Below, in pieces: positions 7,449 to 44,830 of a stretch of DNA of 44,977 nucleotides. Each line of letters starts with the position of its first letter. The stretch's first letter is position 1. Origin of the DNA: Octopus bimaculoides (lineage: Eukaryota); the NCBI RefSeq assembly GCF_001194135.2, contig NC_068989.1, forward strand, positions 43,788,410 through 43,833,386, read 5' to 3'. The position numbers were made by a program, and so were the translations under genes. The notes beneath the pieces were generated by a model, which saw only the letters and a program-made list of their open reading frames with translations, did not search any database and was not told the DNA's origin.

Positions 7449-7588
7449 NNNNNNNNNNNNNNNNNNNNNNNNNNNNNNNNNNNNNNNNNNNNNNNNNNNN
7501 NNNNNNNNNNNNNNNNNNNNNNNNNNNNNNNNNNNNNNNNNNNNNNNNNNNNNNNNNNNNNNNNNNNNNNNNNNNNNNNNNNNNNNNN

Positions 7589-8149
7589 AAGTCTTGTTTC
7601 ATGAAGACAATTTGTGTATAGTTCTGCAAATTATATTGATTCTAGAACGTCTATGCTGATGAGAACATGGATATTATTACGCAAGTATAACGTTAATGTT
7701 CGAAACTGCAGTCCATAGATAACTCTTTATTCTGTATATTTCTCATTTTGTCCTGTTCTGGCGTTTCGCGAAATTTTTCTGGAGAACATTATTTTTCTTT
7801 GTGGTTGGGTCGTTGATGACCTCATTCTAGCATATTGGATGTCCACTTAGTAGTCATCCCTTATACACATGTAATACAATTTTTTCTGAATTTTCAGATT
7901 TTTTTTTATATGCTAGGTCACTTGGTTTTAAATTGAATTAATATTCAATTTATCGCCCTATCTATTTAAATAATAATTTAAATAGTTATGCTCTCCAACT
8001 GGCAACATATACTGCCGTGAATTATTCTCTGCAGAATTGTTTCTGGAATTTTTGAGCGCCAGAGCTGAGGCATTTTGAAAAGCAGCCCCAATGTAATCGG
8101 TAGAACTATATGCAAGTCTTGTTTCATGAAGACAATTCGTGTATAGTTC
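7589..8149 (+). mobile_element. Non-coding hammerhead-containing repeat unit (525-bp period), retrozyme-like or Penelope pLTR-like
   Basis: 36-bp direct repeat at 7589-7624 and 8114-8149 (1 mismatch), internal intact hammerhead, many perfect hairpins, no recognisable ORF. Confidence 0.65.
7649..7720 (+). ncRNA. Intact type I hammerhead ribozyme, predicted cleavage after GUC at 7713
   Basis: Stem I GUCUAUG 7649-7655 / CAUAGAU 7714-7720; CUGAUGA 7656-7662; stem II GAACAU 7663-7668 / AUGUUC 7696-7701; GAAA 7702-7705; stem III palindrome ACUGCAGU; GUC triplet. Confidence 0.88.
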
Positions 8150-8154
8150 AGAGT

Positions 8155-8245
8155 TGATAAAATGAGACAAGTTGAACACTGGGGGTCAATCTTATTGACT
8201 TAGCCCCTCCCCCAAAATTACTAGCCTTGTGCCAAAATTTAAAAC
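8155..8245 (+). mobile_element. SINE family C, 3' fragment
   Basis: gataaaatgag...actgggggtcaat...gccttgtgccaaaattt matches the 3' half of 27585-27802. Confidence 0.65.
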
Positions 8246-8246
8246 T

Positions 8247-8525
8247 AATGTCTGTCTTCCATGCTGGCACGGGTTGCAGAGTTTGACAAGATCTGAAAAA
8301 CTGGAGGACTACATTGAACTACATCTACTTTGGCATGGTTTCAATGGCTGGATGCCCTTTCTAATGCCAATCACTTTACAGAGTGTATTAGGTGCCTTTT
8401 TTGTGGCATTGACACTAGTGAGGTCACTAGATAATTTACAAGACAAGAACCCTCAACCGAGTGGAGATGTAGTATTGAAGGAGGTGGTTTTAAGCTAGGT
8501 GTTGAGAGGTTAAAGTATGATATGA
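8247..8525 (-). mobile_element. D-type element (RTE-LINE-type 3' module with upstream segment)
   Basis: ccatgctggcacgggttg...ggctggatgccctttctaatgccaa...gagaggttaaagtatga; homologous to 14915-15256. Confidence 0.75.
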
Positions 8526-10125: not shown

Positions 10126-11139
10126 ATTTCAAATTACATTATTTAATATTTCTATATACAGTACATTTTTGCTTGATTTTGATATCAGTTTCTTAACAGG
10201 GGTTTGAATCCTGGATGTGTACTCAGTCCCAGTTGCATTTGAACTTAGTTAAGGTGCTACATGATAGAATTGAACTTGAAACCAGGTGACTGAAAAAAGA
10301 TTTCCTACCCACACAACCATATTTGGTCCTATATGAATATTACAAAATGTTTCCTCTCTAAAGATGAGGTTAATAGTTCAAAAAATGATAATCTCATGAA
10401 CAACAACTCATCTCAGACATTTAGACATTTTGCATACATTACATTTGAAAGAAGAAACCCGGATAAAGTGGTCCACCATTCTAGCTCAGTGGATAAAAAC
10501 ATTTTTATTGACAGGATACTTAAGTATTAAATGGTTGACATTTTCTAAATGTTTCTCTAGAGAATGGCTTCTATAGAAAAGGTTTTAAATATCAGGAGAG
10601 TTTTTTTTTTATATATATGTATATATATGTTGGGTTTATATGAATGTTACTAGCTTGTTCTTGCTGTTGTTGTTGTACTTGTTATTGTGTAGCCTCTGGT
10701 CAGCTTGGACTGATCAATCCTACAAAATGCAGGTAATCGACAAAATGGCTAAATGTGAGCCATATATCTGGGTTTTTTTCCTCCTAGTTGTACCATGTCT
10801 TCACATAACTCAGGGCAGTACTGTACTTAAGTTTATGTTACTTTAAGATCATTGCAGTTCACTTGACGCATTGTAGTACAGGAGTAAAATAATAAATGAA
10901 ATGCTGAAAAATTTTCCAAAAACTCTATATTTCAGGCACAAAGGCCCACCTTCAGAAAGATACAGTCAAAGAAATGGGTGTCTATGCAGATCCTCCCATT
11001 TTGGACAGCTTGATCAATTCTGTGAAGTGGGTGGAATTCTTCACATACAGTGTTGACATACAGTGTTGACTTTCTTGCTAATGGACTGATTATATCCACA
11101 AGGAAGCGACTCAGTGGATGACATGCTTAACCTCTACAG

Positions 11140-11878
11140 CTCACTATACCTGGATGTATTAATAACAGTATAACAGTATTAATAACATGCACCAAGTATG
11201 GATTCAGGACATCTGTATACTGCAAGCCGACCTTCACTGGACAATACCTCAACTTCAATTCCCACCGTCGATACAGTGTAAAGAGAGGGATTGTTCAGTG
11301 CCTAAAACAGCGAGCAGAGAATATAACTAGTGATTGTGATACACACTACAAAGAAATGATCAAGCTCAATAACAATCTATTAAGTAACAACTACCCCAAA
11401 AACATACTATCCACTCCAATTATGAAGAAAAGAGAGGATGAAACCAATAAACTGTCCACAGTCTGTCTATCCTATGTGAAAGGCCTCTCCGAAAAGATAC
11501 AAAAGATATGCGGCCCATATAACATCAGGACAGTATTCAAGAGTAATAAACACTTCGCAAATATCTCCTTCGAGTAAAACCACCAATAGAAGAGAATATG
11601 ACCAAAGACTGCGTGTACTCTATCCCATGCAGTTGTGGTAGGTTATACAAAAGCAAAACATGTTGCCCCCTCAAAATAAGGGTAGACAACATCGCAAAGC
11701 TATGACACGAGGAGATATCGATAAATCAGGTATAGCTGATCATGTATGGAAAAATGGAGACCACCTCCCCCTGTGGGATGAAGTTAAAATAATAGACAGA
11801 GAACACCACTGGAAAATACGAAAACTAAAAGAAGCAGCACATATGCTGGGACTGAGTGCAGATATGAGTAGCATATAG
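11140..11878 (+). pseudogene. Penelope-type RT C-terminus and GIY-YIG endonuclease, frameshifted
   Basis: Open frame about 11188-11577, frameshifts near 11550 and 11690, then ORF 11660-11878; no Cys/His zinc-knuckle linker visible, which suggests the Poseidon/Penelope group. Confidence 0.85.
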
Positions 11879-11949
11879 GAACGAGTATTAAGGAAGGATA
11901 GGAAAATATTAGATTTATAAGCCCCAAAATTCACTCCGTAATTGCCCTC

Positions 11950-12022
11950 GGACATATGGTATAGTGGTTAAGAGTGCGGGCTACTAACCCCAAGATTCCG
12001 AGTTCGATTCCAGGCAGTGACC
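11950..12022 (+). promoter_or_regulatory. tRNA-derived head with intact Pol III A and B boxes, followed by (AAT)n at 12025-12047
   Basis: A box TGGTATAGTGG 11957-11967; B box GTTCGATTCC 12002-12011; acceptor stem does not pair, so not a tRNA gene. Confidence 0.8.
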
Positions 12023-12096
12023 TGAATAATAATAATAATAATAATAACACTGAAAAATACCTTAGGAATGATAACCCAGGTTCGAAATTTCCCCAG

Positions 12097-12142
12097 GACA
12101 CCTGATGAAGGCTGAAAGGTATATCAGCCGAAACGTTGTGTT
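12097..12142 (+). ncRNA. Minimal Penelope-type type I hammerhead, predicted cleavage after GUU at 12137
   Basis: Stem I GACAC 12097-12101 / GUGUU 12138-12142; CUGAUGA 12102-12108 plus an extra A; stem II GGCUG 12110-12114 / CAGCC 12125-12129; GAAA 12130-12133; palindromic ACGU stem III. Confidence 0.8.
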
Positions 12143-12312
12143 AACAAGATGTGTTAACTAGATGAGGACAAATATCTGTCAAATATCTGTCANNNNNNNN
12201 NNTGTTAACTAGATGAGGACAAATATCTGTCAAATATCTGTCAAATGTGAATAATGTAAATAATGTACATAATTCCTCATCTCTTAAATATAGAACTTTG
12301 TGTGTGTGCGTG

Positions 12313-14914: not shown

Positions 14915-15256
14915 TAGCTAAGTATCTTGTCTTTAGTAAGACACCTGTCTCTATTCCTCTGTTATGCTCTAACCTCTCACCTGGCACAAAGCCACATCCC
15001 TCAGTTCCACTCCCTCTCCCAGCTGAGAACTTTTCATCTCATGTGTTACTTGGTGATCCTACTACTGTTGGTGCCACATAAAAAAAGCACCCGGTACACT
15101 GTAAAAAGGTTGGCATTAGGAAGGGAATCCAGCCATAGAATCCATGTCAAAGCAAACAATGAAGATTGGTGCAGCTCTCAGGCTTGTCAGTTCCTGTCAA
15201 ACCCTCTAACCCATGCTTACATGAAAGACAGACATTAAATGATGATGATGATGATG
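14915..15256 (+). mobile_element. D-type element with (ATG)n tail
   Basis: ggtgccacataaaaaaagcacc...ggttggcattaggaagggaatccagcc...aacccatgc...acattaaatgatgatgatg. Confidence 0.85.
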
Positions 15257-15764: not shown

Positions 15765-15950
15765 CATGTACCATAATAAGAGGTTCTATGCTACAAATAT
15801 TGGTTGGAGGGTATATATGGACCATGATAAGAAGGTCCAGTCATATGAATCTTAGTAGAAGGATCTATAAGGGTGAACCATGATAGGAGGGTCAGTCATA
15901 AAAACAATGATAGGAGGGTCTATACATATGAATCATGTTCAGAGGGTTTA
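15765..15950. repeat. Degenerate minisatellite of about 28 bp (accatgataggagggtctatacatatga-like), about 7 copies
   Basis: Recurrent catgatar-gagggtc motif. Confidence 0.6.
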
Positions 15951-15999
15951 ATCGCATATTAAGGTGGGTGGGTTTTTACTGCTGATGTTACAGGTGGCG

Positions 16000-16310
16000 A
16001 TACAATTGATGTTCTTACTGTTTTAGTTCATGTGGCACATGATGTTACTGATGGTGTCAAAGTTGGTGTTACATTTGATGTTGTTGTTGTTACAGTTGGT
16101 GTTACATTTGATGTTGCTGTTGTTACAATTGGTGTTACAATTGATACAACTGACAGAGTTACAGTTGGTGTTACAGTTACTGTTACAGTTGGTGTTACAG
16201 TTACTGTTACAGTTGACATTACTGATGGTATTACAGTTGGTGTTACAGTTGATGCTGCTGCCATTACAGTTAGTGTTATAGTGATTGCTGTTGTTATTGT
16301 TTTAATTGAT
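16000..16310. repeat. GTTACA/GTTGGT-based cryptic repeat
   Basis: Near-identical block repeated at 16559-16767. Confidence 0.85.
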
Positions 16311-16558
16311 GCTGCGGCTGATAGTAATGAAGATGAGGCAAAGGACGAAAAGTTCGATGTGGTGAAGGAAAGAGAATTTGAAATGCAATTATGTTAATTC
16401 GTGTTAAGAATTCTAATTATGGTATACTTAGAGCTAGAACTTTTCCTCTTTACCTCCTCTCTCTCTACCCCACTCCCTCTCTCCCCCCTCCCCCTCTCTC
16501 TCAGAAACTCTTCCTCATCACTGCCAACCACTGCCACCACCACCACAANNNNNNNNNN

Positions 16559-16767
16559 CAGTTACTGTTACAGTTGACATTACTGATGGTATTACAGTTG
16601 GTGTTACATTTGATGTTGCTGTTGTTACAGTTGGTGTTACATTTGATGTTGCTGTTGTTACAATTGGTGTTACAATTGATACAACTGACAGAGTTACAGT
16701 TGGTGTTACAGTTACTGTTACAGTTGGTGTTACAGTTACTGTTACAGTTGACATTACTGATGGTATT
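16559..16767. repeat. Second, circularly permuted copy of the GTTACA block (174-bp period), between two 10-N gaps
   Basis: gacattactgatggtatt at 16576 and 16750. Confidence 0.8.
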
Positions 16768-17477
16768 NNNNNNNNNNCACCACTGCTATTATTGTCCTCT
16801 TTCTCCTCATTATCATCGTTATTGTTATCATCATCAGTATCCTCATCATCATCCTCGTCACCATCATCATTCCCACCACCACTGCTGCAACCACTACCAC
16901 CACCACTACCACCATTATCATTGTAATCGTTATCATCATCATCATCATCATCACTATTACCACTACTGTTTTACTACCACAAATACCACCACCACTACTA
17001 ATATCATTATCATCATCATCATATAATGTCCAGATTAATCTTTACTTCATTGCATGTATTTGCATAATCATCAACATTGCCAAAGCTGTGTCGGAAAGAT
17101 AATACTTCCTTTTTTTTTTACTGAGTCGAAATGTCAGAGTCTACACCCTGCTGTAAAGAATAGATGTCGACATACTGAAACAAGGCCTCTGTTTATCTTT
17201 CATTTTCTGCCCCTGTCCTCCGCCCTATACCAATTATGATTGATTTATAACATAGGGACAAATTTAGTGGGAAAGATATAGCTGAATAGATTAGTTATTT
17301 ATTTCTCCAAACCTGGAAAGATGAACAGCAAATATGGCCCCAGGCATGATTTAAACAAAGATTGTAAAGGAGTATAATGAAATAGCACAGTGTGTTTTTC
17401 TTTGGTTCCTTTGCTTCTCATATTATTGGTTTCAAAATTTAGCACAAGGCTAGCAGTTTAAAGAAAAAAATAAAATA

Positions 17478-18204: not shown

Positions 18205-18352
18205 CTATTGATTTCAAAATTTAGCACAAGGTCAACAATTTCAAAGGAAGGAATAAGTCAATTAAATTAACTCCAGTACTCAACTGGTACTTATTTTTAT
18301 CAACCCTTAAAGGATGAAAGGCAAAGTTGATCTCAGGGGAATTTGAACTCAG
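18205..18352 (-). mobile_element. SINE family C, 3' two-thirds
   Basis: caactggtacttatttttatc...aaggatgaaaggcaaag...atttgaactcag. Confidence 0.8.
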
Positions 18353-18533
18353 ATGTGGCTGTGCGGTAAGAAGCTTGCTTCCCAACAATATGGTTCCATG
18401 TTTTCAGTCCCACTGTGTGGCATCTGGGGCAAGTGTCTTCTACTAGAGCCTCGGGCCAACCAAAGCTTTGTGAGTGGATTTGGTAGACGGAAACTGAAAG
18501 AAGCCCATCGTATATATATATATATATATATAT
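18352..18533 (+). mobile_element. SINE family A, left module running into (TA)n and an N gap
   Basis: Standard A head and body. Confidence 0.88.
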
Positions 18534-20851: not shown

Positions 20852-21240
20852 ATTATCATCACCATTTAACATCTGTTTTCCATGCTGGTATAGTTTGGAT
20901 GGCTTGACAGGAACAAGCAAGGCCAGGGACCACACCAGGTTTCATAGTCTGTTTTGGCTTGGCTTCTACAGCTGGATGCCCTTCCGTTCACCAACCACTT
21001 TACAGAGTGTACTGGGTACTTTTTACGTGGCAACATCATCAGTGCTCTTTACATGGCACCAACACAAGTGCTTTTCAAGCGACACCAACACCTACACTAT
21101 TGCTTTGGTCTTCAGTCATATCTTGGTCCGCTGTCATTTCTTTTGTAAGGGTAAGCATTTTGAGATCAGCCTTCAATACTTTGTCCATTGTCTTCTTGGA
21201 TCTCCTTCTTCCACAACTTTCTTCCTGGTTATTGAGGAGA
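20852..21240 (-). mobile_element. RTE LINE 3' end: ORF2 C-terminal remnant + D-type 3' UTR + (ATG)n tail
   Basis: Minus-strand translation ESCGRRRSKKTMDKVLKADLKMLTLTKEMTADQD (about 21225-21120) parallels 14340-14440; continues into the D module ggctggatgcccttcc and the catcat tail. Confidence 0.8.
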
Positions 21241-21486: not shown

Positions 21487-22718
21487 TCAGGCTGAGTAAA
21501 AAGTAAGCAATGTTTTGAAACATGAAATCCATCGCAATATATTTCAACAATGCAGAAATTTTATTCATCAAAGTAAGTGCCATTACTATCAACACACTTT
21601 TTCCAGTGAGTTACAAGTTTGTTTATTCCGGTGACATAAAAATCTGGAGCTCTGGAGCTGATGAACTCTTTGAATGCACTTTCAGCATCGGTTTGATTTT
21701 TGAACTCCTTCTCTTGCAGGAAACCATCAAGGTGCTTGAAAAAGTGGTAGTCGGTAGGAGAAAGGTCTGGGGAATAAATTGAGTGGGGAAGAACTTCATA
21801 GCCAAGTTCCCTCAACTTCTTGAGCATCATTAGTGAAATGTGTGGTCAAGATTGTCAGGAAGAATGATTGGTCCTCTTCTGTTGACCAATCTGGGATGGA
21901 GGAGTAGCAGATTTTCATTCATTTTGGCAATTTCATGGCAATATGTTTCTGCAGTAATGGTTTATCGAGATTTTTAGGAGTTACAGTGAATGAGTCCAGC
22001 AGTACACCACCAAACAGTCACCATAACCTTCTTTTTGAAGAGCTCAGGTTTAGGGAAGGTTTTCGGTGCTTCATTTTGGTCCAACCACTGCGAAGAACGT
22101 TTTTTATTATTGTACAGAATCCACTTTTTATTGCAAGTTACAATACAGTTGAGAAATGGATCAGTCTGGTTATGGAGAAGAAGCGATGAGCAAATTTTGT
22201 ATCTGTGCATTTTATGATTTTCATTCAAATCGTGTGGTACCCATTTGTCGAGCTTTTTGATTTTCTGATCGAAGTTCATTTGCCAGTTCTCAAGTGGTTT
22301 TACAAGGATCTTTCTCAATGACAGTTTTTAATTGACCGTCATTGATGATAGATGGACGTCCACTACACTCACCATCTTCAAGGCTCAGGTCTCCACTGCA
22401 AAATCATTTAAACCCTTTTTGAGCAGACCACTCACTAATGTTTCATTGATATTGCAAGCAATTTCAGCTGCTTTACGTCCTCTTTTGAAGTTGAATAGCA
22501 AAATTGCTGTAATATCACACTTTGATAGTACCATTTCGCATGATTGTAACAAAGGTGAAAAAAATATCAAAGTAAAAATATTGATACATATGGGCAAGTC
22601 TATGTTTGTTTTATCAGACAATTTTTTAAAAAATGTTTTTAAAAAATTCAAAACTCTGCAAAAGTCCAGTACAAAGTCTTCATGGTTCAAAACGTTGCTT
22701 ACTTTTTACTCAACCTAA
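21487..22718 (-). mobile_element. Full-length (1232 bp) decayed mariner, cecropia (Hsmar1-like) subfamily
   Basis: TIR tcaggctgagtaaaaagtaagcaatgttttgaa at 21487 and its reverse complement ending at 22718; TA TSDs at 21485-21486 and 22719-22720. Confidence 0.95.
21561..22545 (-). pseudogene. Mariner transposase pseudogene
   Basis: Motifs FNFKRGRKAAE, KKLDKWVPHDL, FLNCIVTCNKKWILY, KKVMVTVWW and YSPDLSPTDYHFFKHLD; first catalytic Asp replaced by Asn; frameshifts. Confidence 0.93.
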
Positions 22719-27584: not shown

Positions 27585-27802
27585 GGATAAGTGAGCTGAC
27601 TGAATTGTTAGCATGCCGAGCAAAATGCTTAGAGGCATTTTGTCTGTCTGCATGTCCTGAGTTCAAATTCTGCCATGGTCGACTTTACCTTTCATCCTTT
27701 TGGGCATCGATAGAATAAGTACCAGTTAACCACTGGGGTCAATGTAATTGCTTTAATCCCTTCCCCCAAAATTGCTGGCCTTGTGCCAACATTTGAAATC
27801 AA
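27585..27802 (+). mobile_element. SINE family C, full-length
   Basis: gagctgactgaattgttagcatgccgag head; ctgagttcaaattc; ggtcgactttacctttcatccttttggg core; tail gccttgtgccaacatttgaaatcaat. Confidence 0.87.
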
Positions 27803-27819
27803 TGTATACATACACAACT

Positions 27820-35321: not shown

Positions 35322-35590
35322 CCCATCATCATCGTCATCATCATCATCGTCATTCTTTAGCAGCCATTTTCCATGCTGGCATAGGTTGAACAGTTTGAGT
35401 GAAGCTGGCAAACCAGAGAGCTGCATCAGGTTCCAGTCTGATTTGGCTTGGTTTCTATAGCTGGATGCCCTTCTTAATGCCAACCACTTTATAGTGTGTG
35501 CTGGGTGCTGGGTGCTTTTAATGTGCCACTAGCACAAGTGACTTCTATGTGGCACTGACACAAGTGCTTCTTACATGGCACCAGCACAGG
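35322..35590 (-). mobile_element. D-type element with (ATG)n tail and upstream repeats of about 26 bp
   Basis: gctggatgcccttcttaatgccaacc; repeated gtggcac-cacaagtg units at 35520-35590. Confidence 0.8.
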
Positions 35591-37314: not shown

Positions 37315-37855
37315 AAGCAGTGCCCATGACTCTTCACAGGGTTCTAAAAGAGGAAGAATGGCAGGAAGAAGGTATCCTCAAAGTGGAGACCCAACCCAAA
37401 TACTTACAACAGAATGGATTCTGATGAGAGACAGACACCTGTTCCTGTCTCTCAGTCTTACTATAACCTTTCATCATCTGATACAAGATCACCTCCTCCA
37501 ATTCCCCCTCCCCTCTCATAGGATCTTTGTCTTTCAAGTTACTTGGTGACCCTGTCAGTGCTGTTGTCACATAAAAAAACATCCAGTCCACACTGTAAAG
37601 TGTTTGGTGCTTGGAAGGGCATCCAGTTGTAAAAACCATGCCAAAACTGACCTCAGCTGTGCTTGTGCCACATAAAAGCATTCAGTCCACTTTGTTGGGT
37701 GGTTGATGTTAGGATGGGCATCCAGCTGTAAAGAATCTTGCCGAAACAGACACAGAAGTCTGTTGCAGTCTTCCACTTGGCCAGCTCCTGTCAACCCACC
37801 CAACCCATGCCAGTATGGAAGGTGGATGTTAAACAATGATGATGATGATGATCCA
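37315..37855 (+). mobile_element. D-type element with an internally duplicated module and (ATG)n tail
   Basis: gtcacataaaaa...ggaagggcatccagttgtaaa (37566-37635), then gccacataaaag...ggatgggcatccagctgtaaa (37667-37732). Confidence 0.82.
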
Positions 37856-40231: not shown

Positions 40232-40455
40232 TAATACATTGGTTTCAAATTTTGGCACAAGGCCAGCAATTTGGTGTGCAGAGTAAGTCAATTACATTGA
40301 TCCCAGTGTTCAACTGGTACTTATTTTATCAGTCCTGAAAGGATGAAAGGTAAAGGTGACCTTGGCAGAATTTGAACTTGAAACATAAAGACAGGCAAAA
40401 TGCCGCTTAAGCATTTAGCCTGACATACTAATGATTTTGCCAGCTCATTCCTTTA
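40232..40455 (-). mobile_element. SINE family C, full-length
   Basis: ggtttcaaattttggcacaaggccagc tail through gccagctcattcctt head. Confidence 0.87.
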
Positions 40456-41050: not shown

Positions 41051-41106
41051 CATACTTGTACCTATATATTATACCTTTACAAGATGGAAAACAAAAAGTT
41101 GCCAGC

Positions 41107-41178
41107 AGGTGGTTATAGGACTCGAACCCATACCCCTCAGATACTGGCTGAGTGCTCTAACCATTAAACTAAACAACC
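41107..41178 (-). ncRNA. tRNA-like cloverleaf (head of SINE family F), followed by T5 at 41093-41097
   Basis: Acceptor GGTTGTT/AACCACC (6 of 7 paired), anticodon stem CTCAG/CTGAG with loop CCAGTAT, T stem ATGGG/CCTAT with TTCGAGT loop; C at position 33. Confidence 0.6.
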
Positions 41179-41649
41179 CCCAAGAACAATTGGTATTTGT
41201 TTATATTTATTTTGTTATTGATATCTACAGTAAACATTTGTATGCTAGCATATAAGCTCCATTTTGAATTCTTTGCTTCTTCTCCACCTCCCATCCCCCC
41301 TACCCCACACCCCCATTTTCTATCAATATTTTGACTAATGTTTTGTTGTATTAAATAACCTCTAAGTTGTCTGTGAATTCTCATACTTTCAGTTCATTTT
41401 GTTTCTTGCTAATCTTACCTTCCCTTTTATATCGACTCACTAAATTATTGATATTTCTCTTTTTGGCGTAGCCCATCCAGTTGACTTATTATAGTGTGTG
41501 GTACAGAATATCTTTAAAAGATACAGCGATTACATCAATTGTTATATAATACACAAGAACCAGTCAATGACCTCCATTTCAAAAGTTCTTTCAGATAGAA
41601 TCAATCACTACGTAGTAACCTTTCAGATGTTTACTCTTAGAACACAGCT

Positions 41650-42899: not shown

Positions 42900-43338
42900 A
42901 TAGGCAGTACTGTCATAAAACATGGATACACAAGGCAGCTGCCAGGAGATTCCATGTCTTAGGGGGTCCAGTACTAATCTATGTATAGTGTAGCTGTGCA
43001 TGTCATGGCTCCAGTGCATTGCTTTGCTCAGAGGAATGTTTGTAACAGTCATGAGAAAACAGCAGCCACCTTCCTCAGCACTACTTCCTCTCAGTTGAGG
43101 GGACCTTGTCATGTAAGTTGTTTGGTCACCCCACTGCTGCTGGTGCCACATAAAAAGCACTTGGTACACTTTGTAAACTTGGTTGGTGTTAGGAAGGGCA
43201 TTCACAGCTGAAGAAACCATTCCAAGCAGACAGTCAAGCATGGTGCAGTCTTCTGACTTGCTAGTTCCAGTCAAACAGTCCAACCCATGCCAGCATGGAC
43301 AATGGACGTTGAATGATGATGATGATGATGATGATGAT

Positions 43339-43411: not shown

Positions 43412-44704
43412 ACTGAAAAAATAGTCTTTTCCATCAATTTAACTAGGAAGAAGATGTTCATATATTCTCTGATTATTTCTTAGTAAATTAGAGACAATTG
43501 TTCCATTGATGTTATAAGCTGAGAAAACAGAAAGATAGATATTGGGAAATTTAATTTTTTTTCTCATGTCTATATAATTTTGCTATTAAATTTATTGAAG
43601 TTTTAAGAATATTTCACACCTTTTAGACAATGAAGAATTTTCATTAAATGATTTACTTTATCCAAAGTTATTTTTTCTTCTGTTTTTTTGGGGGGGCGGG
43701 GGAGCATTCTGAAATTAAAACAAAAGCAACTAAAAATCACAAGGTGACCTTACTGCTCATGTATTATCTAATAATAATTCTATTATCTGAAGAATTTAGA
43801 AAGTAAATTTTTATTCACACCTTAACAAGAAGCATATAAAAAATATCCAATTTAGTCTTGGAAATAGAACTCAGAAATAGTAACAGTATTCTAACACTAG
43901 TTCTTCAAATCAGAAACATTCTTCACAATTGTATCATTTTCTTTAGTTCACTTCTCATATATCGTTTAATACATTTTTGAAATGAGATGAAATTATTTTA
44001 TGTCTTGTCTAGAAATTAAATATTTTAAAGCTCAAATCACTATTATAATTAATTATTAATAATTATAAATAATTCTTATAATTGCAAGTATCTCTTAAGA
44101 ACTTATTAAAAATTCAATATTGCAAACTTGTTAAATTGTGATGCTTGAATATGAATTATTAGATCAGAGACTGAATTACTCGATTGGAAATAAAGAGTTG
44201 TCCCCAAGCGACACACAAAATGGATATGGCAGGATCTAAACATGATTTTTAAGTTGGTGTATTGGCACATTAAGCAGTCTGCTACTATATCTGCTTGTTT
44301 TGAGCAACAGGAATAGTTTATGTTATGGAATAATGCATCATCATCATAATTTGCTCTATGTGGTTTACACACATACTCACACACACATATATATATACAT
44401 AAATATGCACACGTGTACACACATACATATACATATATATATATACATATATGTATGCATATACATGTGTATGTATATATAATTATATATAAATATAATA
44501 TATAATATATATGCTTATATATAGATGAATTTATGGATGTATGCGTGTATTTATGTTGAGCCACGTCCCTCAGAACTACATCTCTATTCAATCAAGTAGT
44601 TTTGTCTTATGAGGGGTTTGATAGCCTCACTAGTACTAGGGTCATCAAAAAAAGCCTGTACTCTCTGTAAAGTGAATGGCTTAAGAAAGGGCTTTAGAAA
44701 CTAT

Positions 44705-44830
44705 GTCGAAGCATAAATGGAGCTTGACATAGTCCTCTGGCTTGGAAGATCTTGCTGAACAGTCCAACAGATGATAGCATGGAAGACAGACATGAAAAGG
44801 TGATAATGACGATGATGATGATGATGATTA
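44705..44830 (+). mobile_element. Degenerate D-type 3' end with (ATG)n tail
   Basis: aacagtccaacagatgatagcatggaagacagacat...gatgatgatg. Confidence 0.6.

What the first reader, a model, noticed from the sequence alone, without database searches (positions are those of the whole stretch)
7589..8149. 525-bp non-coding, highly self-complementary unit with a terminal direct repeat: candidate retrozyme-like circular RNA element
The hammerhead lies in a unit bounded by a 36-bp direct repeat (7589-7624 and 8114-8149, period 525 bp), the partial-tandem layout expected when a circular or multimeric RNA is reverse-transcribed and integrated. The unit has no recognisable ORF but many pairings: gttctggcgttt 7755-7766 with gagcgccagagc 8054-8065 (12 bp including G-U); ctagcatat 7827-7835 with atatgctag 7908-7916; 10-bp hairpins at 7929-7952 and 7962-7985; ggtcg/tgacc 7808-7821; ggatg/catcc 7837-7859. 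Hammerhead-bearing non-LTR retrozyme circRNAs are described in some animals (coral, mussel, axolotl); I am not aware of a description of this unit, and calling it a retrozyme is inference.
Basis: partly seen in the sequence, partly recalled or inferred. Interest (0 to 1): 0.85.

Follow-up and report, generated by a model that had tools for sequence, protein, structure and literature searches.

The report
Solo hammerhead-ribozyme retroelement copy
A 525-bp non-coding, strongly self-pairing DNA unit with one genuine type-I hammerhead ribozyme and a 36-bp end repeat, sitting against a truncated SINE, is most likely a dead single copy of an already known kind of ribozyme-bearing parasitic retroelement (an animal 'retrozyme' that depends on Penelope-like elements), not a new kind of element.

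Summary
The 36-bp direct repeat (7589-7624 / 8114-8149, 35/36 identical, period 525) is real, and so is every listed pairing. The unit folds far better than shuffles (circular + strand z = -6.6). Its hammerhead (7649-7720, cleavage after C7713) is genuine: 2 of 2000 window shuffles give an equal motif, and it aligns end to end with Rfam Hammerhead_1.

Three caveats apply:
- The left repeat copy starts at the first base after an N-gap, so 36 bp is a minimum.
- Only one hammerhead is visible, because the second repeat copy ends before it. This locus therefore cannot release a unit-length or circular RNA.
- No second copy was found in the window or in any reachable collection.

Two new findings bear on the interpretation. 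The right end is a true junction with a 5'-truncated tRNA-derived SINE, so the unit looks like a nested insertion. A decayed Penelope-like element with a textbook minimal hammerhead lies 3 kb away and shares no sequence with the unit.

Best reading (confidence about 0.5): a solo, 1.07-unit cDNA copy of a non-autonomous, Penelope-dependent hammerhead element, copied from a circular or multimeric RNA. This is a new member of a known kind, of modest interest.

The parts
7449..7588 (.). Assembly gap (140 N) hiding the left boundary of the element
   Evidence: The left flank is a (GGA/GAA)n-like microsatellite. The gap estimate of 140 is close to the roughly 115 nt of SINE head missing at the right junction.
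7589..8113 (+). One 525-bp unit: non-coding, 33% GC, highly self-paired (61% of bases paired in the circular fold)
7589..7624 (+). Left copy of the direct repeat; starts at the first base after the gap, so 36 bp is a minimum length
   Evidence: (D12).
8114..8149 (+). Right copy of the direct repeat (35/36 identical): start of a second unit that stops 7 nt before the first base of helix I (unit position 61, 7649)
7649..7720 (+). Type-I hammerhead ribozyme. Helix I 7649-7655 / 7714-7720. CUGAUGA 7656-7662. Helix II 7663-7668 / 7696-7701 with a 27-nt extension 7669-7695. GAAA 7702-7705. Helix III is A-U and C-G closed by UGCA, within the 8-nt palindrome ACUGCAGU 7705-7712. Predicted cleavage is between C7713 and C7714.
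   Evidence: Rfam RF00163 Hammerhead_1 aligns over model positions 1-45 at 22.6 bits, below the gathering score of 34, with E about 1e-3 on a 96-nt slice.
8100..8149 (+). Junction hairpin spanning the unit boundary. It is the copy of the 14-bp closing stem 7614-7627 x 8100-8113, with an inner hairpin equivalent to 7591-7608. The element ends 3 nt short of the full 3' arm.
   Evidence: Only 3 of 5000 random 20-mers of the window pair at 14 bp or more with 7589-7627. 15 of 500 shuffles of the rest of the unit reach 14 bp somewhere.
7755..8065 (+). Nested long-range helices that make the quasi-rod (7755-7766 x 8054-8065, 7770-7776 x 8046-8052, 7780-7785 x 7992-7997, 7826-7835 x 7908-7917) and local hairpins 7929-7952 and 7962-7985
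   Evidence: helix list.
8147..8252 (+). 3' part (about 100 bp) of a roughly 215-bp tRNA-derived SINE that begins at the element's right end. About 115 nt of its head are missing, and 3 bp (TTC) are shared at the junction.
   Evidence: alignment with copies at 27610-27805 +, 40236-40430 -, 18212-18400 -.
11012..12142 (+). Context, not part of the unit. A decayed Penelope-like element (RT thumb and GIY-YIG-like end at 11170-11851, with an inverted piece at 11012-11141) and its minimal hammerhead at 12097-12142. It shows that the presumed class of autonomous partner exists in this genome.
   Evidence: No nucleotide similarity to the unit.

Best explanation
The 561 visible bases are a solo, slightly longer-than-unit (1.07 units or more) DNA copy of a non-autonomous hammerhead-bearing retroelement. 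This is the class called animal non-LTR retrozymes, now viewed as non-coding derivatives of Penelope-like elements (PLEs).

Proposed cycle:
1. Master copies lying in tandem are transcribed into multimeric + strand RNA. Pol II is more likely than Pol III, because the + strand has nine T4-T9 runs.
2. Two neighbouring hammerheads pair through the palindrome ACUGCAGU to form an extended helix III, and cut after GUC (C7713).
3. The 525-nt monomer is ligated by a host RNA ligase into a highly base-paired circle.
4. A PLE reverse transcriptase/GIY-YIG endonuclease nicks a target and starts cDNA synthesis inside the stem-loop at the unit junction (unit position about 36). It copies the circular or uncleaved multimeric template for a little more than one turn. 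That yields an insertion with a terminal redundancy, here inside or next to a SINE.

This particular copy keeps one hammerhead only and is a dead end.

Shown: the hammerhead motif, the 525-bp periodicity, the strong fold, the junction with a truncated SINE, and a PLE in the same window.
Inferred: transcription, cleavage, circularisation, mobilisation by a PLE, and membership of a multicopy family.
For: - The hammerhead is genuine and of the classical type-I kind: strict descriptor met in 2 of 2000 shuffles, and a full-length alignment to RF00163. As a negative control, 14 string matches to the same core found in public metagenomes and genomes had helices of 2 bp or fewer.
- The 35/36 direct repeat with period 525 encloses no ORF.
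- The element's ends are not at the ribozyme cleavage site, so the template was circular or multimeric rather than a cleaved monomer (sequence).
- The fold is far better than shuffles on both strands. It is better on the hammerhead strand, with 18 G-U pairs against 10.
- The repeat is structurally tied to the unit's 3' end by a 14-bp stem, which argues that it is element sequence rather than a target duplication.
- The right end is a junction with a SINE lacking about 115 nt of head, and the gap estimate of 140 nt would hold that head.
- A PLE remnant with its own minimal hammerhead lies in the same window.
- Literature:
  - PMC7229834: features and life cycle of retrozymes.
  - PMC11167929: PLE reverse transcription starts internally, in a stem-loop, on multimeric RNA.
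  - 10.64898/2026.07.22.740005: retrozymes derive from PLE terminal repeats, and solo monomers are common.
Against: - Only one copy exists in 45 kb. No relative was found in any reachable collection. Repetitiveness, the core property of a transposable element, is therefore untested.
- One hammerhead and 1.07 units fail the published criterion for an active retrozyme.
- The left boundary and any target duplication are hidden by the gap.
- The hammerhead scores below Rfam's gathering threshold (22.6 against 34) because of a 31-nt insertion in stem II. Its active fold costs +5.5 to +7.1 kcal/mol over the minimum-energy fold.
- The neighbouring PLE shares no sequence with the unit, so no partner is identified.
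- Strong folding alone is not specific in this repeat-rich window (two controls fold better).
- The closing stem is only moderately unusual if its position is not specified (15 of 500 shuffles).
Confidence: 0.5

Rival explanations
1. Ordinary Penelope-like element debris. The unit is a terminal-repeat (pLTR) region, or an internally deleted copy, of an ORF-bearing PLE family. The 36-bp repeat is the usual partial-tandem or 'tail' signature (30-40 bp) of PLE insertions, not evidence of an independent circular-RNA element.
For: - PLE terminal repeats carry hammerheads, some with a small palindromic helix III (PMC4209133).
- PLE insertions form partial tandems with a 30-40 bp tail (PMC8557442, PMC3846280, PMC11167929).
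- Most PLE insertions are 5'-truncated, leaving one terminal repeat (10.64898/2026.07.22.740005).
- PLEs exist in this genome.
- The repeat length seen here (36 bp) falls in the tail range.
Against: - There is no RT or GIY-YIG similarity anywhere near the unit. The only PLE coding similarity in the window is at 11012-11851.
- The unit shares no sequence with that PLE's 3' region.
- The 525-bp period encloses no ORF, so the replicating unit itself is non-coding.
- The unit's hammerhead matches Rfam type I, whereas the PLE's own hammerhead in this window is the loop-less minimal type with a bulged base and has no Rfam match.
- In the PLE studied in vitro, the insertion ends downstream of the hammerhead (PMC11167929). 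Here it ends upstream of it.
Confidence: 0.2
2. Edge of a hammerhead-bearing satellite array, like newt satellite 2 or cricket pDo500, whose other units were collapsed into the assembly gap. Amplification would be mainly by unequal crossing-over rather than retrotransposition.
For: - The left repeat copy starts exactly at the contig start, which is what is seen whenever a repeat continues into a gap.
- Tandem repeats are commonly collapsed in short-read assemblies.
- The contig begins 24 nt before the only mismatch of the repeat. A k=25 graph assembler would give this if the upstream sequence of both copies were identical (inference, low weight).
- Hammerhead satellites of 330-500 bp are known (PMC2837043, PMC7229834).
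Against: - The gap is estimated at only 140 nt, about a quarter of a unit.
- The array would have to end inside a SINE at 8147-8150.
- No further unit sequence occurs anywhere else in the 45 kb.
- Such satellites are in any case now classed as retrozymes (PMC7229834), so this is more a variant than a true rival.
Confidence: 0.15
3. Not a mobile element. This would be a unique AT-rich stretch that happens to contain a hammerhead-like motif, with a 36-bp segmental duplication produced by replication slippage or end-joining.
For: - There is a single copy in the window and no relatives anywhere searched.
- The hammerhead is below Rfam's gathering score.
- AT-rich sequence easily forms helices, with the longest chance helix averaging 10.5 bp in shuffles.
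Against: - A hammerhead with the observed helices arises in 2 of 2000 shuffles of the whole window.
- It coincides with a fold z-score of -6.6, a 525-bp terminal redundancy, and a junction that truncates a SINE.
- The joint occurrence is hard to get by chance.
Confidence: 0.1
4. A 489-bp insertion (7625-8113) flanked by a 36-bp target-site duplication.
For: Direct repeats flanking an insert are the classical target-duplication signature. Larger duplications than in plants are mentioned for animal retrozymes (PMC7229834).
Against: - The right flank after 8149 is SINE sequence, but the 36-mer shows no SINE similarity beyond the 3 bp TTC. The 36-mer is therefore not the SINE target.
- It forms a 14-bp stem with the last 14 nt of the supposed insert.
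- PLE target duplications are 8-10 bp (PMC3846280).
Confidence: 0.03
5. An endogenised cDNA of an exogenous viroid-like or satellite circular RNA with a hammerhead in one polarity.
For: The size (525 nt), the quasi-rod fold, a single-polarity hammerhead and a greater-than-unit-length copy are all compatible with this. Many viroid-like circular RNAs are now known (PMC11721086).
Against: - No ribozyme was found in the other polarity.
- The hammerhead is the metazoan genomic type-I form with a palindromic helix III.
- AT-rich composition matches the host.
- Nothing similar exists in viral or metagenome collections.
- A host retroelement origin is far more parsimonious.
Confidence: 0.02

Closest known systems
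Animal non-LTR retrozymes (Cervera and de la Pena 2020, PMC7229834: coral, mussel, axolotl and many invertebrates)
   Same: Type-I hammerhead with a short palindromic helix III. A unit of a few hundred bp, low GC, no ORF, LTR, PBS or PPT. A highly self-paired predicted RNA. Co-existence with PLEs. Like the mussel family, no recognisable loop 1-loop 2 contacts, and the ribozyme is partly masked in the minimum-energy fold.
   Different: - Only 1.07 units and one hammerhead are visible, whereas retrozymes are defined on tandem dimers to multimers.
- At 525 bp it is above the 170-400 nt range typical of invertebrates. It is within the 51-972 bp range of vertebrate families (10.64898/2026.07.22.740005).
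- Stem II is unusually long, at 6 bp plus a 27-nt extension.
- No RNA evidence and no copy-number evidence.
Penelope-like element terminal repeats (pLTR) with 30-40 bp 'tail' (PMC8557442, PMC3846280, PMC11167929)
   Same: Partial-tandem layout with a short terminal redundancy in the tail size range. A hammerhead near the repeat. The 3' end lies in a stem-loop, as for the internal RT start sites of the anole PLE. A short microhomology sits at a junction, and the element is nested in another retroelement.
   Different: - No RT/GIY-YIG ORF lies between the repeats.
- No similarity to the PLE remnant in the window.
- The insertion ends upstream, not downstream, of the hammerhead.
- The hammerhead is classical type I rather than the loop-less minimal form seen at 12097-12142.
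Hammerhead satellites and SINE-like elements (newt satellite 2, Dolichopoda pDo500, Schistosoma Sm-alpha; PMC2837043, PMC2770079)
   Same: Rfam Hammerhead_1-type ribozyme embedded in a 330-500 bp non-coding repeat. pDo500 is of almost the same length.
   Different: No array is visible. There are no Pol III A/B boxes, and many T-runs argue against a Pol III SINE like Sm-alpha. No sequence similarity was tested or known.
Plant LTR retrozymes and viroid-like hammerhead circular RNAs (PMC4918200)
   Same: A non-coding, self-paired unit with the hammerhead partly blocked in the most stable fold. The inferred template is circular RNA.
   Different: Type I rather than type III hammerhead. No LTRs, PBS or PPT. 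AT-rich rather than GC-rich.

Membership tests
Hammerhead ribozyme, type I (Rfam RF00163) | Conserved core CUGAUGA ... GAAA ... with the cleavage triplet GUC (U16.1, H17) and a G10.1-C11.1 pair | tested here: met
   CUGAUGA 7656-7662, G7663-C7701, GAAA 7702-7705, GUC 7711-7713.
Hammerhead ribozyme, type I (Rfam RF00163) | Three helices around the core, with helix I open and helices II and III closed | tested here: met
   Helix I 7 bp, helix II 6 bp, helix III 2 bp plus UGCA. This combination occurs in 2 of 2000 shuffles of the window.
Hammerhead ribozyme, type I (Rfam RF00163) | Score at or above the curated gathering threshold (34 bits) | tested here: not met
   22.6 bits over model positions 1-45. 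The deficit comes from 31 nt in the stem II loop where the model has 6. No hit at gathering.
Hammerhead ribozyme, type I (Rfam RF00163) | Self-cleavage at the predicted site | not testable with these tools
   Needs in-vitro transcription of monomeric and dimeric constructs.
Animal non-LTR retrozyme | Tandem repeat with at least two consecutive units, each with a complete hammerhead (10.64898/2026.07.22.740005 Methods; PMC7229834) | tested here: not met
   1.07 units and one hammerhead. The second copy stops at 8149, before the motif. TRF lists no 525-bp array but could not have, since its longest period is 500. The gap could hide at most about 140 nt.
Animal non-LTR retrozyme | Non-coding unit of about 150-1000 bp with low GC and no LTR/PBS/PPT | tested here: met
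   525 bp, 33% GC, longest internal ORF 49 aa, no protein relatives.
Animal non-LTR retrozyme | Highly self-paired RNA | tested here: met
   Circular + strand fold -140.4 kcal/mol, z -6.6, 61% of bases paired.
Animal non-LTR retrozyme | Multicopy family in the genome | tested here: inconclusive
   No second copy in the 45-kb window.
Animal non-LTR retrozyme | Expressed as unit-length linear and circular RNA | not testable with these tools
   No transcriptome data available.
Animal non-LTR retrozyme | Co-occurrence with autonomous PLEs | tested here: met
   PLE remnant at 11012-11851 with a minimal hammerhead at 12097-12142. It is decayed, so only presence of the class is shown, not an active partner.
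Penelope-like element (autonomous) | ORF with reverse transcriptase and GIY-YIG endonuclease between the terminal repeats | tested here: not met
   No ORF and no tblastx similarity to PLE coding sequence in or next to 7589-8149.
Penelope-like element (autonomous) | Terminal repeats sharing sequence with a known PLE family | tested here: inconclusive
   No similarity to the only PLE in the window or to two PLE loci from another organism.
Pol III SINE-like hammerhead element (Sm-alpha type) | Internal A and B boxes and a transcript free of T4+ terminators | tested here: not met
   Only weak, wrongly ordered box-like matches. Nine T4-T9 runs on the hammerhead strand.

The most novel reading that the evidence does not exclude
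The unit represents an undescribed about 525-nt hammerhead circular-RNA family with an atypically long stem II. This locus would be a direct genomic footprint of rolling-circle reverse transcription: cDNA synthesis started in the junction stem-loop and ran 1.07 turns round a circle before integrating into a SINE. If other copies share the 3' end at unit position 36, that would map the reverse-transcription start site of a retrozyme for the first time from genomic data.
Probability: 0.25. Interest if true: 0.55.

Novelty: new member of a known kind. Interest (0 to 1): 0.3.

Why it matters
If confirmed as a family, the unit would add a lineage to the list of animals carrying hammerhead circular-RNA retroelements. 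It would also supply a hammerhead variant with a 39-nt stem II, and its ends could show where the helper reverse transcriptase starts on the RNA. That bears on the open question of how retrozymes are mobilised by Penelope-like elements. As a single decayed copy it has no evident function for the host. The practical value is mainly for repeat annotation, so that the unit is not mistaken for a gene or a regulatory RNA.

Tried and rejected
**Searches for relatives**
- A six-frame pseudo-protein of the unit against 5.8 billion protein clusters, hoping to catch spurious ORF calls on other copies: no hit.
- Exact-ORF look-ups of five ORFs in or beside the unit, to recover contigs that close the gap: none on record.
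- An exact hammerhead-pattern scan of metagenome and viral contigs: 0 hits.
- A looser pattern gave 8 and 6 hits in metagenome and prokaryote genome contigs. All were chance strings without helices, useful only as a negative control.

**Organism identification**
- This failed. The last protein search was swamped by mariner transposases at 58% identity or less. 'Cephalopod/mollusc' remains a guess and is not used as evidence.

**Penelope-like element checks**
- Pfam did not recognise the PLE thumb or GIY-YIG pieces, and the PDB had no relative. PLE identity rests on three things: homologues carrying RVT_1 and HTH_animal, tblastx, and the GIY-YIG-like motif read, which I recognise from knowledge of PLEs.
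- PLE loci from another organism (L001, L002) share only the PLE coding region with the window and nothing with the unit.

**Readings considered and rejected or left weak**
- The idea that the hammerhead is the 'minimal PLE type' was dropped. Short palindromic helix III is also the rule in classical metazoan type-I hammerheads (PMC4209133), and Rfam Hammerhead_1 aligns full length.
- Hammerhead architecture alone does not separate retrozymes from all PLE repeats.
- A Pol III SINE reading was rejected.
- A target-duplication reading was rejected.
- Inferring the assembler's k from gap flanks was inconclusive. There is a 41-nt overlap at one N10 gap, against the k=25 implied at 7589.
Full report
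**What the window is.** The window is a gappy eukaryotic scaffold with 14 N-runs and about 36% GC, crowded with tRNA-derived SINEs, microsatellites and transposon remnants. The source organism is masked and I could not identify it. Any taxon name would be a guess.

**The observation.**
- The repeat is real: 7589-7624 and 8114-8149 are 35/36 identical with a spacing of 525 (family D12).
- That structure also contains a 14-bp stem (7614-7627 x 8100-8113) and a 9-bp stem (7630-7638 x 8089-8097). These close the unit into a branched quasi-rod.
- The linear + strand folds at -142.6 kcal/mol against -107.1 +/- 6.2 for dinucleotide shuffles (z -5.7). The - strand gives z -4.4.
- Folded as circles, the z-scores are -6.6 (+) and -5.5 (-).
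- Among 43 other 525-nt pieces of the window (mean z -1.4), only two fold better. Both are inverted SINE pairs or TA repeats.
- The unit has no ORF above 49 aa inside it, and a six-frame query had no relative among 5.8 billion protein clusters.

**The hammerhead.**
- On the + strand, helix I is 7649-7655 / 7714-7720 and CUGAUGA is 7656-7662.
- Helix II is 7663-7668 / 7696-7701, with a 27-nt extension that forms its own imperfect hairpin.
- GAAA is 7702-7705. Helix III is only A-U and C-G, closed by UGCA. Cleavage is predicted after GUC at C7713.
- A loose structural descriptor finds one motif in the window against 0.057 expected.
- A descriptor as strict as the observed helices I and II (with helix III of at least 2 bp) is satisfied in 2 of 2000 shuffles of the window.
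- Fourteen exact matches to the same core strings in public metagenome and prokaryote contigs all lacked helices I and II, which shows what chance matches look like.
- Rfam finds nothing at gathering thresholds. On a 96-nt slice, Hammerhead_1 (type I) aligns over its whole length at 22.6 bits (threshold 34). The loss is due to 31 nt in the stem II loop where the model has 6.
- Positions 7705-7712 (ACUGCAGU) are an 8-nt palindrome. A short helix III with a palindromic loop is the rule in metazoan type-I hammerheads. It is thought to make them work as dimers in tandem transcripts (PMC4209133).
- The active fold is not the most stable one. It costs +5.5 kcal/mol in a 91-nt piece and +7.1 kcal/mol in the circular unit.

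- The left repeat copy starts at the first base after the 140-N gap, so 36 bp is a lower bound and the left boundary is unknown.
- The second repeat copy stops at 8149, 7 nt before the point where the hammerhead begins in the unit. The locus therefore has one ribozyme and cannot excise a unit-length RNA by itself.
- The right end is a true junction. From 8147-8150 onward the sequence aligns with the 3' 100 bp of a roughly 215-bp tRNA-derived SINE, present at 27610-27805, 40236-40430 and 18212-18400.
- Those other copies continue upstream with about 115 nt of SINE head that are missing here. Three bases (TTC) are shared at the junction.
- The simplest reading is that the unit was inserted into a SINE whose head lies in the gap. 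The gap estimate of 140 nt fits that reading.
- An alternative is a chimeric retrocopy, made when a reverse transcriptase copying the SINE RNA switched to the unit RNA. Both orientations agree with this. Either way the unit behaved as an insertion.

**A Penelope-like element in the window.**
- Positions 11170-11851 (+) encode, with frameshifts, the thumb region and a GIY-YIG-like end of a PLE ORF. The ORF is 54-62% identical to its seven best hits, ORF fragments from an ENA assembly (P0001-P0007); some hits and the called genes next to them carry RVT_1 and HTH_animal. A short inverted piece lies at 11012-11141.
- After an inserted tRNA-like SINE comes a textbook minimal PLE hammerhead at 12097-12142. 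It has helix I of 5 bp, a bulged A after A9, helix II of 6 bp, and GAAA-CG-UU with no loop 3 (descriptor features from PMC4209133). Rfam does not match it.
- This PLE shares no nucleotide similarity with the unit, and no PLE coding similarity lies near the unit.
- Two things follow. The genome hosts the presumed class of helper. The unit is not the terminal repeat of this particular PLE.

**Most likely mechanism.** I read the 561 visible bases as a solo copy, about 1.07 units long, of a non-autonomous hammerhead retroelement. This is the class called animal non-LTR retrozymes (PMC7229834), recently argued to derive from PLE terminal repeats (bioRxiv 10.64898/2026.07.22.740005).
- A 525-bp periodicity without an ORF says the replicating unit is itself non-coding.
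- The ends of the insertion are not at the ribozyme cleavage site. The template was therefore not the cleaved linear monomer but a circle or an uncleaved multimer.
- The 3' end lies inside the junction stem-loop, three bases short of its full 3' arm. This recalls the finding that a PLE reverse transcriptase starts internally, in a stem-loop of a multimeric RNA, giving the 30-40 bp 'tail' of PLE insertions (PMC11167929; PMC8557442).
- The closing stem ties the 36-mer to the last 14 nt of the unit. Only 3 of 5000 random 20-mers of the window pair that well with 7589-7627. A 14-bp helix somewhere in the unit is less rare (15 of 500 shuffles).
- More G-U pairs occur on the hammerhead strand (18 against 10), which mildly favours RNA-level structure on that strand.
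- Nine T4-T9 runs and the lack of A/B boxes argue against Pol III transcription.
- Transcription, cleavage, ligation into a circle and mobilisation by a PLE are all inferred, not shown.

**Rivals.**
- **Ordinary PLE debris (0.2).** It fits the tail-sized repeat, but there is no ORF and no similarity to the local PLE.
- **Edge of a hammerhead satellite array collapsed into the gap (0.15).** It fits the contig starting exactly with the repeat. The small gap and the SINE junction speak against it, and such satellites are now classed as retrozymes anyway.
- **A non-mobile stretch with a chance motif and a local duplication (0.1).** It is hard to square with the joint occurrence of a 1-in-1000 hammerhead, the fold, the redundancy and the SINE truncation.
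- **A 36-bp target duplication (0.03).** The 36-mer is not SINE sequence, and PLE duplications are 8-10 bp (PMC3846280).
- **An endogenised exogenous viroid-like RNA (0.02).** It has nothing specific in its favour.

**Comparison with known families.**
- As a hammerhead, the motif meets the core and helix requirements of type I but not Rfam's score threshold. Cleavage is untested.
- As a retrozyme, it meets the compositional and structural features and the co-occurrence with PLEs.
- It fails the defining requirement of at least two tandem units with complete hammerheads. Copy number and circular RNA could not be tested.
- I therefore call it retrozyme-like, a 'monomer/solo' copy in the terms of the 2026 preprint, and not a demonstrated retrozyme.
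- It is not an autonomous PLE and not a Pol III SINE of the Sm-alpha type.

**Verdict.** The element belongs to a kind already described in many invertebrate phyla, so it is at most a new member with a long stem II. Interest is modest (0.3). The decisive tests all need the source genome or wet-lab work:
- copy number and ends in the source genome;
- closing the gap;
- circular-junction reads;
- cleavage of dimeric transcripts.

Noticed in passing
window 11012-12142: Decayed, 5'-truncated Penelope-like element. The RT thumb and GIY-YIG-like end at 11170-11851 (+) carry frameshifts. A short inverted piece sits at 11012-11141. A tRNA-like SINE with an (AAT)n tail is inserted at about 11955-12050. 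A textbook minimal PLE hammerhead follows at 12097-12142 (bulged A, helix II GGCUGA/UCAGCC, GAAA-CG-UU, no loop 3).
   Followed up: partly
window 12152-12243: The 10-N gap at 12193-12202 is flanked by an identical 41-nt suffix and prefix (12152-12192 = 12203-12243). This is most likely two contig ends that overlap but were not merged. It lies in the PLE 3' region, so a real tail-like duplication is not excluded.
   Followed up: partly
window 8147-8252; 27610-27805; 40236-40430; 18212-18400: A roughly 215-bp tRNA-derived SINE family with at least four copies in the window. A second SINE family shares its 3' module. Inverted SINE pairs give extreme fold z-scores at about 28001 (z -19) and about 9601 (z -12.7).
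   Followed up: partly
window 8256-8520 and 14964-15237, 20953-21032, 35369-35508, 37456-37821, 43066-43299, 44561-44793: An uncharacterised dispersed repeat directly downstream of the SINE fragment. It has no Pfam match on its longest ORF.
   Followed up: no
window 21564-22327 (-): Mariner/Tc1-type transposase remnant in two ORF pieces (Pfam Transposase_1, E about 1e-15). Best database relatives are 58% identical or less.
   Followed up: partly
window 41105-41179 (-): A tRNA-Thr(AGU)-like sequence, the only Rfam hit at gathering (48.3 bits) and also called by ARAGORN. It could be a tRNA gene or the head of a SINE.
   Followed up: no
L002 17619-17667 (+): In a contig of ENA assembly ERZ21867824 (another organism), a hammerhead with an AT-only palindromic helix III lies about 590 bp downstream of an RVT_1 ORF (15876-17030). 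This is the usual PLE arrangement.
   Followed up: no
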